Origin: Octopus sinensis | Taxonomy: Eukaryota | DNA length: 5,448 nucleotides | Reading direction: 5' to 3' | Assembly (NCBI RefSeq): GCF_006345805.1 | Contig: NW_021830026.1 | Coordinates: 1 to 5,448, forward strand | Notes under the pieces: model-generated | Seen by the model: only the letters and a program-made list of their open reading frames with translations | Database searches by the model: none | Told to the model about the DNA's origin: nothing | Translations under genes and position numbers: made by a program | In this document: positions 1-5,448 of the stretch, piece after piece | Layout: the number at the start of each line of letters is the position of its first letter | Position numbering within the stretch: position 1 is the stretch's first letter

Positions 1-395
1 GTCTCCCGTGGCCTTTAGCACAACTTCACAAGCCAGCCCCTACTCAAATCGTCCTGTCGAAAGACCCTTGTCCTACGTCCTGTTTTGTTTTGTTGTTTAT
101 TTTTTATTTTCACCGTTATTGTTTTTACGTTTTTGTATTCTTATTGGTGTCACGTATTCTGTATTTTTGTTTGTGTACTTCGATCGTTTTCCGTCCTTTC
201 GTTGTATACATTCGAAGCTTTGGGCTGGCCATATCGGAGCAATCTCAAGATTAATCAGCCGAAATTGCTAAGATGATCTGGTTCTTGACTGATGACTGAG
301 GGCTTCGAATGTCCCGTCCTGTGGTTCTTGTGTCGTCTCTGTGGTGTTTCATGTTCTTGTCCATGTCTGTCTTAATTTTACTGTTTACCTATATA
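1..395 (+). mobile_element. Direct repeat X, copy 1 (may extend left of the window); putative pseudo-LTR of a Penelope-like or retrozyme-like element
   Basis: Seen: near-identical to 734-1135 (about 10 differences, nearly all 1-2 nt indels); ends in TTTACCTATATA and contains a hammerhead-like core. Inference: partial tandem direct repeats that carry hammerheads are typical of Penelope-like elements and retrozymes. The duplication is certain; the family call is not. Confidence 0.6.
238..304 (+). ncRNA. Candidate hammerhead ribozyme with permuted (pseudoknotted) strand order, copy 1
   Basis: Seen: stem III AGCAAT 238-243 / ATTGCT 264-269; predicted cleavage after AUC (C244); stem I TCAAGA 245-250 / TCTTGA 283-288; CTGATGA 289-295; GAAA 261-264. 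Stem II is only 4 bp: either CTGA 296-299 / TCAG 255-258 with CC bulged, or GGCT 301-304 / AGCC 257-260 with a 5-nt insertion after A9. Confidence 0.5.
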
Positions 396-733: not shown

Positions 734-1135
734 GTCTCCCCGTGGCCTTTAGGCACACAACTTCACAAGCCAGCCCCTACTCAAACGTCCTGTCGAAAGA
801 CCCTTGTCCTACGTCTCTGTTTTGTTTTGTTGTTTATTTTTATTTTCACCGTTATTGTTTTTAACGTTTTTGTATTCTTATTGGTGTCACGTATTCTGTA
901 TTTTTGTTTGTGTACTTCGATCGTTTTCCGTCCTTTCGTTGTATACATTCGAAGCTTTGGGCTGGCCATATCGGAGCAATCTCAAGATTAATCAGCCGAA
1001 ATTGCTAAAGATGATCTGGTTCTTGACTGATGACTGAGGGCTTCGAATGTCCCGTCCTGTGGTTCTTGTGTCGTCTCTGTGGTGTTTTCATGTTCTTGTC
1101 CATGTCTGTATTTTAATTTTACTGTTTACCTATAT
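734..1135 (+). mobile_element. Direct repeat X, copy 2; 3' end runs into (TA)n
   Basis: Seen: GTCTCCCCGTGGCC at 734 through TTTACC-TATATA at about 1135 aligns end to end with 1-395. Confidence 0.6.
975..1042 (+). ncRNA. Candidate permuted hammerhead ribozyme, copy 2
   Basis: Seen: AGCAAT 975-980, C981, TCAAGA 982-987, TCAGCC 992-997, GAAA 998-1001, TTGCT 1002-1006, TCTTGA 1021-1026, CTGATGA 1027-1033, CTGA 1034-1037. Identical to copy 1 except one extra A in the unpaired linker. Confidence 0.5.
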
Positions 1136-1240
1136 ATATATATATATATATTATACAATACTCACTTATATATATGCATGTCTACATATGTATACATGTA
1201 TGACTATGGACGTGTTTGCATACATAATATACATAGTGAG
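1131..1240. repeat. (TA)n microsatellite and AT-rich low-complexity flank
   Basis: Seen: pure TA run 1131-1151, then degenerate TA/CA. Confidence 0.9.
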
Positions 1241-1260: not shown

Positions 1261-1288
1261 ACAGACAGACAGACAGATAGATAGATAT

Positions 1289-1370
<82 letters not shown>
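1261..1370. repeat. Compound (GACA)n-(GATA)n microsatellite
   Basis: Seen: GACA units 1261-1275 grading into a long GATA array that ends at 1370. Confidence 0.97.
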
Positions 1371-1510: not shown

Positions 1511-1737
1511 TTCTTTACTGCCCACAAAGGGCTAAACATAGAGGGGACAAACAAGGACAGACAAAGAGATTAAGTCGATTACATCGACCCCAGTGCGTAA
1601 CTGGTACTTTATTTATCGACCCCGAAAGGATGAAAGGCAAAGTCAACCTCGGCGGAATTTGAACTCAGAACGTAACGGCGGACGAAATACGGCTACGCAT
1701 TTCGCCCGGCGTGCTAACGTTTCTGCCAGCTCACCGC
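1511..1737 (-). mobile_element. tRNA-derived SINE (family A), near full length, inserted in (TA)n
   Basis: Seen on minus: GCGGTGAGCTGGCAGAAACGTTAG head with A-box-like TGGCAGAAACG (1718-1728), B-box GTTCAAATTCC (1654-1664), central GCCTTTCATCCTTTCGGGGTCGATAAATAAAGTACCAG (1601-1638); TA runs on both sides (1488-1510, 1739-1751). Resembles an abundant Octopus SINE (from memory). Confidence 0.9.
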
Positions 1738-1750
1738 GTATATATATATA

Positions 1751-3237: not shown

Positions 3238-3277
<40 letters not shown>

Positions 3278-3320
3278 GCAGCAACATTTACAACAATAAC
3301 AATGACGACAACGCCAACAA
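3238..3320. repeat. (AAC)n microsatellite
   Basis: Seen: pure 3238-3276, then degenerate AGC/AAT/GAC units. Confidence 0.97.

Positions 3321-3507: not shown

Positions 3508-3509
<2 letters not shown>

Positions 3510-3576
<67 letters not shown>
3510..3576. repeat. (CAT)n microsatellite
   Basis: Seen: one CGT interruption; source of the poly-Asp ORF artefact. Confidence 0.97.
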
Positions 3577-3579
<3 letters not shown>

Positions 3580-4051: not shown

Positions 4052-4332
4052 AACACACACACACACACACTCACACATACAAACAGAAAGATAGAGAGAG
4101 GTGGGGGGAGAAAAGAGAAAATTCACATATACGTGTATTTAGATGCGCGCATACACATGTAAGTACATATATATATATAATTATATATATATAATATATA
4201 TACATATATATATAGGTATGTATGTATTATATATATATATATATATATATAATGGTGTGTGTATATATAGGTGTGTGTGTATAAATATGTATAATATATA
4301 TATGTTTATATGACTATGTATATATATATGTG

Positions 4333-4363
<31 letters not shown>

Positions 4364-4551
4364 GAATGTATATATATGTGTGTGTGTATATATATATATA
4401 TATACGTGTATGTATATGCATGTATAGAAATACATACATACATACATAATTACATACAAACATGCATAGATACACAGTCACACACGCTTGCTAGTAGATA
4501 TATGTACGTATGTGTTCATACAATGTAACCCATTCACACACGCGCGCACAC
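4052..4551. repeat. Compound (AC)n/(AG)n/(TA)n/(TG)n low-complexity block
   Basis: Seen directly. Confidence 0.9.
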
Positions 4552-5377: not shown

Positions 5378-5403
5378 GGATGATGATGATGATGATAATA
5401 GTA

Positions 5404-5448
<45 letters not shown>
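5378..5448. repeat. Compound (GAT)n-(AAT)n microsatellite running off the window
   Basis: Seen directly. Confidence 0.97.

What the first reader, a model, noticed from the sequence alone, without database searches (positions are those of the whole stretch)
238..304. Hammerhead ribozyme core with reversed strand order (pseudoknotted or trans-assembling topology)
Seen: strand A = AGCAAT-C-TCAAGA (stem III, UH site, stem I; 238-250); strand C = TCAGCC-GAAA-TTGCT (255-269); strand B = TCTTGA-CTGATGA-CTGA (283-299). Stems I and III are perfect 6-bp helices in exactly the register the core requires, and the triplet is AUC. Established: hammerhead types I, II and III are circular permutations of the order A-B-C. 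Here the order is A-C-B, which cannot fold as a planar three-way junction. Inference: it folds as a pseudoknot in which the 4-nt TTAA linker joins the distal ends of stems I and II (which lie side by side in the active fold, where loop-loop contacts normally act) and a 13-nt linker joins stem III to stem I; alternatively B is supplied in trans by another copy. Type I-III descriptor searches would miss it. The complementary blocks are swapped in order, so a simple inverted duplication does not explain them. Weakness: stem II is only 4 bp and needs either a CC bulge before G12 or a 5-nt insertion after A9; a competing AATC/GATT hairpin (241-252) also exists. I cannot check whether this topology has already been reported.
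Basis: partly seen in the sequence, partly recalled or inferred. Interest (0 to 1): 0.82.

Follow-up and report, generated by a model that had tools for sequence, protein, structure and literature searches.

The report
Hammerhead look-alike in permuted order
The hammerhead-ribozyme pieces are really in the sequence, in a strand order already published and shown to work in 2023 (type SGC), but this copy breaks two features those ribozymes need, so it is most likely an inactive look-alike in duplicated non-coding animal DNA.

Summary
AGCAAT-C-TCAAGA (238-250), TCAGCC-GAAA-TTGCT (255-269) and TCTTGA-CTGATGA-CTGA (283-299) are present. Stems I and III are perfect 6-bp helices in hammerhead register. 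An identical second copy lies at 975-1037, inside a 395-bp direct repeat.

The "reversed" order A-C-B is not new. It is the type-SGC hammerhead of Eckert, Friedrich, Weinberg and Weinberg (NAR 2023, PMC10085705), which was shown to self-cleave.

This sequence fails that family's tests:
- Stem II is only 4 bp. It needs either a CC bulge before G12 or a 5-nt insertion after A9. The four tested members I rebuilt have neither.
- The fourth helix that clamps the CUGAUGA block, which is required for cleavage of SGC-3, is absent.
- Stronger competing helices (a 14-bp outer stem; GGCUGG/UCAGCC) take over the stem II strands.
- Rfam gives no hammerhead hit.
- No relatives were found, so covariation cannot be tested.

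A constellation this good is rare per window (about 1e-5) but expected about once per gigabase. The CTGATGA heptamer itself sits at the junction of a 7-nt tandem duplication.

Verdict: probably an inactive look-alike (about 0.68). A decayed or active type-SGC ribozyme is not excluded (about 0.25 together).

The parts
238..250 (+).
251..254 (+). UUAA linker from the distal end of stem I to the distal end of stem II (typically 3 nt in published type-SGC ribozymes)
255..269 (+).
270..282 (+). 13-nt linker from block G to block C. It has no significant partner downstream, so the fourth helix of type-SGC ribozymes is missing
283..299 (+).
301..304 (+). Alternative stem II strand GGCU. It pairs with AGCC 257-260 and abuts G12, but leaves a 5-nt CUGAG insertion after A9
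287..300 (+). Tandem 7-mer GACTGAT|GACTGAG. The CTGATGA heptamer is formed at its junction
   Evidence: read directly
208..221 (+). 5' arm of a 14-bp outer helix that encloses the whole motif. It pairs with 299-312 at -18.1 kcal/mol, with pair probabilities of about 0.9 for the inner 11 pairs
299..312 (+). 3' arm of the outer helix. It takes A299 and all of 301-304 away from stem II
223..228 (+). GGCUGG, a better partner for UCAGCC 255-260 (-8.3 kcal/mol, probability 0.42) than either stem II strand
975..1037 (+). Second copy of the whole S-G-C constellation (S 975-987, G 992-1006, C 1021-1037). It is identical except for a 14-nt second linker
1..395 (+). Copy 1 of the duplicated T-rich non-coding segment that carries the motif. 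Its left end is cut by the window
734..1136 (+). Copy 2 of the duplicated segment (96.8% identical). It ends at a TA microsatellite

Best explanation
This is an inactive hammerhead look-alike in type-SGC block order, inside a locally duplicated, non-coding, T-rich segment of an animal-type genome.

Shown: all consensus core bases and two perfect 6-bp helices (I and III) are in register. The region lacks a stem II that abuts the core on both strands. It also lacks the fourth helix that clamps block C in the published ribozymes.

Inferred: the constellation arose without selection for catalysis. Short complementary hexamers are common in a 120-nt stretch. The CTGATGA heptamer is the junction of a 7-nt tandem duplication (GACTGAT|GACTGAG). 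A genome-scale scan is expected to turn up about one such case per gigabase.

If transcribed, the RNA would mainly fold as a long hairpin closed by the 14-bp helix 208-221/299-312. Inside it, stem III (238-243/264-269) would compete with GGCUGG/UCAGCC (223-228/255-260). I expect no site-specific cleavage at C244.
For: - Stem II defect: only 4 bp. It needs either a 2-nt CC bulge between 11.1 and G12 with C10.1-G11.1 (-2.0 kcal/mol), or a 5-nt insertion after A9 (-4.2 kcal/mol).
- The four tested type-SGC ribozymes I rebuilt (SGC-1, -2, -3, -5) all have no bulge, one U after A9, G10.1-C11.1 and 4-5 bp as drawn (5-6 by my G-U-tolerant count).
- The paper reports only three atypical sequences among 583 predicted members, none with this defect. 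It also states that no known hammerhead alignment has more than 1-2 nt inserted next to CUGAnGA.
- Fourth helix: disrupting it abolishes SGC-3 cleavage. Here the best duplex between linker and flank (-7.2 kcal/mol) equals shuffled controls (-6.5 +/- 2.0) and lies about 27 nt away.
- Competition: outer helix -18.1 kcal/mol with probability about 0.9; helix 223-228/255-260 at probability 0.42; stem I 0.01; both stem II registers 0.00. In SGC-3, stem III and helix 4 each reach about 0.9.
- Folding energy of the region is ordinary, with z-scores of -1.1, -1.0 and +0.7.
- Rfam gives no hammerhead hit.
- The chance rate is compatible with a genome scan.
- Known type-SGC ribozymes come only from metatranscriptomes and occur with hairpin ribozymes.
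Against: - A match this good is rare for a single window, about 1e-5.
- Stem III and its neighbours (AGCAAUCU and CGAAAUUGCU) are identical to those of the active ribozyme SGC-3. This is roughly a 1e-3 coincidence, noticed after the fact.
- The 4-nt stem I to stem II linker is close to the family's usual 3 nt.
- The motif sits at the same position in two copies 737 bp apart, as ribozymes do in retrozyme-like repeats.
- Minimal hammerheads can cleave in vitro without tertiary contacts (my own knowledge), and natural twister ribozymes tolerate structural imperfections (abstract of PMC11662667).
- No experiment was done.
Confidence: 0.68

Rival explanations
1. This is a decayed relic of a once-active type-SGC hammerhead carried by a repeat element. 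The core and stems I and III survive. An indel near A9 (for example the extra CUGA 296-299) displaced stem II, and the clamp helix was lost.
For: - Deleting 296-299 would give CUGAUGA-G-GGCU pairing with AGCC-GAAA. That is a contiguous block G and block C with G10.1-C11.1 and a single-nucleotide insertion after A9, as in SGC-1, -2, -3 and -5 (read).
- Stem III is identical to that of SGC-3.
- All core bases are intact.
- The motif is present in both copies of the repeat.
Against: - No other copies were found to show an intact ancestor.
- Type-SGC ribozymes are known only from environmental RNA, not from animal DNA.
- There is no trace of the fourth helix.
- The 7-nt tandem duplication gives a simpler origin for CTGATGA.
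- A story that is one indel away from function can be told for many chance matches.
Confidence: 0.17
2. This is an active type-SGC hammerhead of a relaxed kind. Stems I and III and the UUAA tether hold the fold. The CC bulge is extruded, or the CUGAG loop is tolerated. Cleavage 3' of C244 and C981 would release a 737-nt unit, as in retrozyme-like repeats.
For: - The block order and the tether match a validated topology.
- The core is complete and stems I and III are perfect.
- The two copies are 737 bp apart.
- Published type-SGC ribozymes are slow, and stem II of SGC-3 is short, 4 bp as drawn.
Against: - It fails block contiguity and lacks helix 4.
- Stem II pair probability is 0.00 against strong competitors.
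- The repeat is not a clear tandem array: 396-733 is not repeated after copy 2.
- There is no covariation and no expression evidence.
Confidence: 0.08
3. This is a trans-assembling or dimeric hammerhead. Block C of one transcript or copy pairs with blocks S and G of another.
For: Two copies exist in the window.
Against: - The same stem II defect applies in trans.
- Supplying block C in trans does not remove the crossing topology.
- The intermolecular helices are only 6 + 4 bp and AU-rich (-4.8 and -2.0 kcal/mol).
Confidence: 0.01
4. This is another structured RNA or DNA element unrelated to hammerheads, for example a long hairpin transcript closed by the 14-bp palindromic helix, or a C/D-box-like RNA (UGAUGA followed by CUGA).
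For: - The outer helix is 14 bp at -18.1 kcal/mol, with probability about 0.9 for its inner 11 pairs.
- There is a weak Rfam hit to sR44 at 266-303 (9.9 bits, E = 2.4).
Against: - The folding z-scores are ordinary.
- The snoRNA hit is far below its gathering score of 45, and UGAUGA abuts CUGA with no guide region between them.
- There are no relatives to show conservation.
Confidence: 0.04

Closest known systems
Type-SGC hammerhead ribozymes (HRIMA-1 motif and type-SGC variants; Eckert, Friedrich, Weinberg and Weinberg, Nucleic Acids Res 2023, PMC10085705)
   Same: - The 5'-to-3' order is the same: cleavage-site block, GAAA block, CUGAnGA block.
- All core bases are consensus.
- Stems I and III are 6 bp.
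- A short tether (4 nt here, typically 3) joins stem I to stem II.
- Stem III and its neighbours are identical in sequence to SGC-3 (AGCAAUCU, CGAAAUUGCU).
   Different: - Stem II does not abut the core on both strands (a CC bulge or a 5-nt insertion, versus no bulge and a single U).
- The first stem II pair is C-G in one register, not G10.1-C11.1.
- The fourth helix flanking block C is absent.
- The second linker is 13 nt and unpaired.
- The source is animal-like genomic DNA in a duplicated segment, not an environmental RNA that also carries hairpin ribozymes.
- No covariation or cleavage data exist.
Type I hammerheads of metazoan non-LTR retrozymes and Penelope-like elements (PMC7229834; bioRxiv 10.64898/2026.07.22.740005)
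   Same: Animal genomic context, and a motif recurring at the same place in directly repeated units (737-bp spacing).
   Different: - The block order is not type I, and no Rfam hammerhead model matches.
- Only two copies are visible, and the spacer 396-733 is not repeated after the second.
- The unit is longer than the 170-400 nt I recall for animal retrozymes.
Type-CSG and type-GCS hammerheads (same 2023 paper)
   Same: They are non-circular permutations with crossing helices.
   Different: The block order differs. The window matches only the SGC order.

Membership tests
Type-SGC hammerhead | Blocks in the order S (site), G (GAAA), C (CUGAnGA) on one strand | tested here: met
   The descriptor scan returns only order A-C-B (= SGC), at 238-299 and 975-1037.
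Type-SGC hammerhead | Consensus core bases: CUGAnGA, GAAA, the A15.1-U16.1 pair, and H17 not G | tested here: met
   CUGAUGA 289-295, GAAA 261-264, A264-U243, C244
Type-SGC hammerhead | Stems I and III contiguous with the core | tested here: met
   Both are 6 bp, perfect Watson-Crick, with no gap to the core
Type-SGC hammerhead | Stem II contiguous with G12 and within 1-2 nt of A9 (blocks G and C uninterrupted), with G10.1-C11.1 | tested here: not met
   The two options are a 2-nt CC bulge before G12 with C10.1-G11.1, or a 5-nt insertion after A9. SGC-1, -2, -3 and -5 all have no bulge, one U and G-C. The rule is stated.
Type-SGC hammerhead | Short linker (typically 3 nt) from stem I to stem II | tested here: met
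   UUAA, 4 nt, in register IIa; 6 nt in register IIb
Type-SGC hammerhead | Fourth helix pairing the sequences that directly flank block C (required for SGC-3 cleavage) | tested here: not met
   The best duplex between linker and flank is -7.2 kcal/mol, versus -6.5 +/- 2.0 for shuffles, and it is displaced by about 27 nt. Within the adjacent 25 nt the best is only -3.6 kcal/mol. Known members have it abutting the block, and in SGC-3 its pair probability is about 0.87.
Type-SGC hammerhead | Covariation in stems I, II and III across homologues | not testable with these tools
   Only two copies exist, with no substitutions in the stems. No relatives were found in the viral or metagenome collections or in the protein index. 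No animal genome collection is on hand.
Type-SGC hammerhead | Site-specific self-cleavage abolished by mutating G5 | not testable with these tools
   This needs in vitro transcription. The predicted site is 3' of C244, and the control is a G291 mutation.
Type-SGC hammerhead | Context: environmental RNA (metatranscriptomes) that also carries hairpin ribozymes | tested here: not met
   The window is microsatellite- and repeat-rich DNA. Rfam finds no hairpin ribozyme.
Classical hammerhead types I, II and III (Rfam hammerhead families) | Match to a curated covariance model | tested here: not met
   No hammerhead family hit at E up to 10, in the whole window or in 195-330 alone
Non-LTR retrozyme | A tandem array of units, each carrying a type I hammerhead | tested here: not met
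   There is no type I hammerhead. The only repeat is 1-395 versus 734-1136, and the spacer is not repeated.
C/D-box snoRNA | C and D boxes with guide regions and a terminal stem, matching a curated model | tested here: not met
   sR44 scores 9.9 bits against a gathering score of 45, E = 2.4. UGAUGA abuts CUGA.

The most novel reading that the evidence does not exclude
The two copies are working (or very recently working) type-SGC hammerheads. They would be the first non-circularly permuted hammerhead encoded in an animal genome. They would lack the clamp helix and tolerate an interrupted stem II junction. They would cut a 737-nt repeat transcript at C244 and C981, as a retrozyme does.
Probability: 0.08. 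Interest if true: 0.7.

Novelty: not a real feature. Interest (0 to 1): 0.25.

Why it matters
If the sequence did cleave, three things would follow. Type-SGC hammerheads would extend from environmental RNA replicons into animal genomes. The clamp helix and an uninterrupted stem II junction would turn out to be dispensable. Descriptor searches would have to be loosened.

As it stands, the value is mostly a caution. A complete hammerhead core with two perfect stems can appear about once per gigabase without function. The permuted topology that made this finding look new was already published in 2023.

Tried and rejected
- **Rfam 15**, whole window and 195-330 alone, at E up to 10: no hammerhead or other ribozyme. 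The mir-297 and mir-466 hits are TA/TG microsatellite artefacts.
- **Other hammerhead readings.** I looked by eye for a classical type I, II or III hammerhead around CUGAUGA 289-295 and GAAA 59-62 and found none. There is no CUGANGA on the minus strand.
- **Search for relatives.**
  - An exact 29-mer in the viral and metagenome collections found nothing.
  - Exact look-ups of four window ORFs found nothing.
  - A protein homology search with the ORF spanning copy 2 of the motif found nothing.
  - A gapped pattern AGCAATC..GAAATTGCT..CTGANGA returned 130 loci, all chance or coding matches. None had stem I of 6 bp or more together with a stem II in register. The contig that carries SGC-3 is not in the collections.
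- **Covariance model.** I aligned four published type-SGC ribozymes to build a covariance model. MAFFT shifted SGC-3 by one column in blocks S and G. I dropped the model and compared features directly instead.
- **Published alignment.** The 176-sequence type-SGC variant alignment is held only as images.
- **Host identification.** A text search for the SINE-like sequences in papers found nothing.
- **C/D snoRNA reading:** rejected.
- **LTR or retrozyme reading of the 395-bp repeats:** by eye I saw no TG..CA ends and no primer-binding site or polypurine tract next to the repeats, and there is no type III hammerhead.
- **Null from the fetched loci**: not used, because those loci were selected to contain stem III.

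Full report
**1. What is in the sequence**

- 238-250 is AGCAAT-C-TCAAGA.
- 251-254 is TTAA.
- 255-269 is TCAGCC-GAAA-TTGCT.
- 270-282 is a 13-nt linker.
- 283-299 is TCTTGA-CTGATGA-CTGA.

Stem I (245-250/283-288) and stem III (238-243/264-269, including the A15.1-U16.1 pair) are perfect 6-bp Watson-Crick helices in hammerhead register. The cleavage triplet is AUC. All consensus core bases are present.

My own descriptor allowed all six block orders. It differs by one extra A in the second linker. It belongs to a direct repeat, 1-395 versus 734-1136, which is 96.8% identical, with most of the differences being single-base indels. CTGANGA occurs nowhere else in the window on either strand.

**2. 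The surroundings**

The window is not prokaryotic. It is full of microsatellites: (AGAT)27, long TA, TG, AAC and TCA runs, and an ATA run at the 3' end. No tRNA gene is found. It carries repeated pieces such as GAATTTGAACYCAGAA at 1655 and 2390. From memory these resemble cephalopod SINEs, but I could not confirm the host.

The motif lies in a T-rich, non-coding segment. The 338 bp between the two copies (396-733, partly CT-rich) is not repeated after copy 2. So this is a local duplication, or at most about 1.5 units of a 737-bp repeat whose left end is cut by the window.

**3. The topology is already known**

The order A-C-B is the "type SGC" hammerhead of Eckert, Friedrich, Weinberg and Weinberg (Nucleic Acids Res 2023, PMC10085705). 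That paper divides the ribozyme into blocks S (site), G (GAAA) and C (CUGAnGA). It shows that SGC-ordered RNAs from metatranscriptomes cleave at the predicted site.

A linker of typically three nucleotides joins stem I to stem II, and all core helices cross one another. The family also has a fourth helix that pairs the sequences directly flanking block C. Disrupting any of the four helices in SGC-3 abolishes cleavage, and compensatory changes restore it.

The paper counts 583 predicted members. All come from metatranscriptomes (soil, spruce and freshwater for the variants) and are associated with hairpin ribozymes. I found no later report of this type in an animal genome.

**4. Membership test**

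I rebuilt SGC-1, -2, -3 and -5 from the oligonucleotide table of the paper's supplement. I measured them and the window with one script. The helix count in that script extends through G-U pairs, so it reads stems slightly longer than the paper draws them.

| Feature | Four tested ribozymes | Window |
|---|---|---|
| Stem II length | 4-5 bp as drawn (5-6 by my G-U-tolerant count) | 4 bp |
| Gap between stem II and G12 | none | CC bulge (register IIa) or none (IIb) |
| Insertion after A9 | exactly one U | none (IIa) or 5 nt, CUGAG (IIb) |
| First stem II pair | G10.1-C11.1 | C-G (IIa) or G-C (IIb) |
| Fourth helix | abuts block C | absent |

- Register IIa is UCAG/CUGA, at -2.0 kcal/mol. Register IIb is AGCC/GGCU, at -4.2 kcal/mol.
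[quoted passage not shown] It treats the blocks as uninterruptible.
- For the fourth helix, the best pairing between the 13-nt linker and the 3' flank is -7.2 kcal/mol. Shuffled flanks give -6.5 +/- 2.0, and the pairing lies about 27 nt downstream.

So the block order, the core bases, stems I and III and the short tether are met. Stem II contiguity, the clamp helix and the biological context are not.

**5. Competing structure**

The strongest local helix is a 14-bp stem, 208-221 with 299-312 (-18.1 kcal/mol). It encloses the whole motif. It takes A299 and all of 301-304 away from stem II.

UCAGCC 255-260 has a better partner upstream in GGCUGG 223-228 (-8.3 kcal/mol).

| Helix (nested ensemble) | Pair probability |
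|---|---|
| Outer stem | about 0.9 |
| 223-228/255-260 | 0.42 |
| Stem III | 0.40 |
| Stem I | 0.01 |
| Stem II, both registers | 0.00 |

In SGC-3 the two non-crossing helices, stem III and the clamp helix, each reach about 0.9. They give a scaffold onto which stems I and II can dock. The overall folding energy of the region is ordinary, with z-scores of -1.1, -1.0 and +0.7.

**6. Chance**

I planted CTGATGA in 40,000 random flanks. Non-canonical-order constellations totalling 12 bp or more occurred at 5e-5 per core with a Markov model of the element, and at 6e-4 per core with a model of the whole window. The rate falls about 2.5- to 3-fold per added base pair. Constellations of 16 bp or more occurred once in 40,000 (2.5e-5) under the whole-window model. 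They extrapolate to about 1e-6 under the element model.

There is roughly one CUGANGA per 4 kb per strand. By inference this gives about 3e-6 to 7e-5 per window, but 0.5 to 12 per gigabase. The match is striking for one window and unremarkable for a genome-scale scan. The two copies are one event.

A further detail read: positions 287-300 are a tandem 7-mer, GACTGAT|GACTGAG. CTGATGA is its junction, which gives the heptamer a mundane origin.

**7. What argues the other way**

Stem III and the bases next to it (AGCAAUCU in block S, CGAAAUUGCU in block G) are identical to those of SGC-3, the fastest of the published type-SGC ribozymes. Given a hammerhead-like candidate, this is roughly a 1e-3 coincidence. 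I noticed it after the fact, and I could not see the family alignment to learn whether this stem is conserved.

Deleting CUGA 296-299 would create a textbook type-SGC core: CUGAUGA-G-GGCU facing AGCC-GAAA. That keeps a decayed-relic reading alive.

The motif also recurs at a 737-bp spacing, as ribozymes do in retrozyme-like repeats. However, animal retrozymes carry type I hammerheads, and none is present here.

**8. Relatives**

None could be found.
- An exact 29-mer found nothing in the viral or metagenome collections.
- Four exact ORF look-ups and one protein homology search found nothing.
- A gapped pattern requiring the SGC-3-like S and G blocks plus CUGANGA returned 130 loci. All were chance or coding matches with no stem I and stem II in register.

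**9. Verdict**

The topological insight is correct and matches a validated class, but that class is already published. This sequence fails two features on which the published members depend.

| Reading | Probability |
|---|---|
| Inactive look-alike | about 0.68 |
| Decayed type-SGC relic | about 0.17 |
| Active relaxed type-SGC ribozyme | about 0.08 |
| Another structured RNA or DNA element | about 0.04 |
| Trans-assembling or dimeric hammerhead | about 0.01 |

A cheap in vitro cleavage assay with a G291 mutant and a construct lacking C259-C260 would settle it.

Noticed in passing
window 1-395 and 734-1136: A direct repeat of about 400 bp, 96.8% identical, with most of the differences being single-base indels, at 737-bp spacing. 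The left end is cut by the window start, and the right end stops at a TA run. The 338-bp spacer (396-733, CT-rich from about 470 to 660) is not repeated after copy 2.
   Followed up: partly
window 287-300: A tandem 7-mer, GACTGAT|GACTGAG. The hammerhead heptamer CTGATGA is formed at the junction of the two units, which suggests a slippage origin for the core motif. It is present in both copies of the repeat.
   Followed up: no
window 208-221 / 299-312: A 14-bp helix (11 Watson-Crick, 2 G-U, 1 terminal A-U) built around the palindromic sites TTCGAA and AAGCTT. It encloses the whole motif and is the dominant predicted structure on both strands.
   Followed up: partly
window 238-245 and 260-269, compared with SGC-3 of PMC10085705: AGCAAUCU and CGAAAUUGCU are identical to blocks S and G of the published active type-SGC ribozyme SGC-3 (contig Ga0247524_116441), so stem III has the same sequence. 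This is an unexplained coincidence or a hint of shared ancestry. The family alignment was not readable.
   Followed up: partly
window 1540-1740, 2040-2160, 2370-2640: SINE-like interspersed-repeat fragments. GAATTTGAACYCAGAA occurs at 1655 and 2390, with a looser third copy near 2580. From memory they resemble cephalopod (octopus) SINEs. ARAGORN finds no tRNA gene, and the host is not confirmed.
   Followed up: partly
window 4135-4520, 2144-2230, 1158-1239: The Rfam hits to mir-297, mir-466, mir-1277 and mir-3149 (best 61 bits against a gathering score of 90) all fall on TA/TG microsatellites. They are low-complexity artefacts.
   Followed up: no
window 1263-1370, 2164-2364, 3238-3320, 3509-3577, 4167-4404, 5395-5448: Dense microsatellites: (AGAT)27, (TA)50, (AAC)28, (TCA)23, about 240 bp of AT/TATG, and (ATA)18 running off the window end.
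   Followed up: no
window 266-303: A weak match to the archaeal C/D-box snoRNA model sR44 (9.9 bits, E = 2.4), caused by UGAUGA directly followed by CUGA. There is no guide region and it is not credible.
   Followed up: yes
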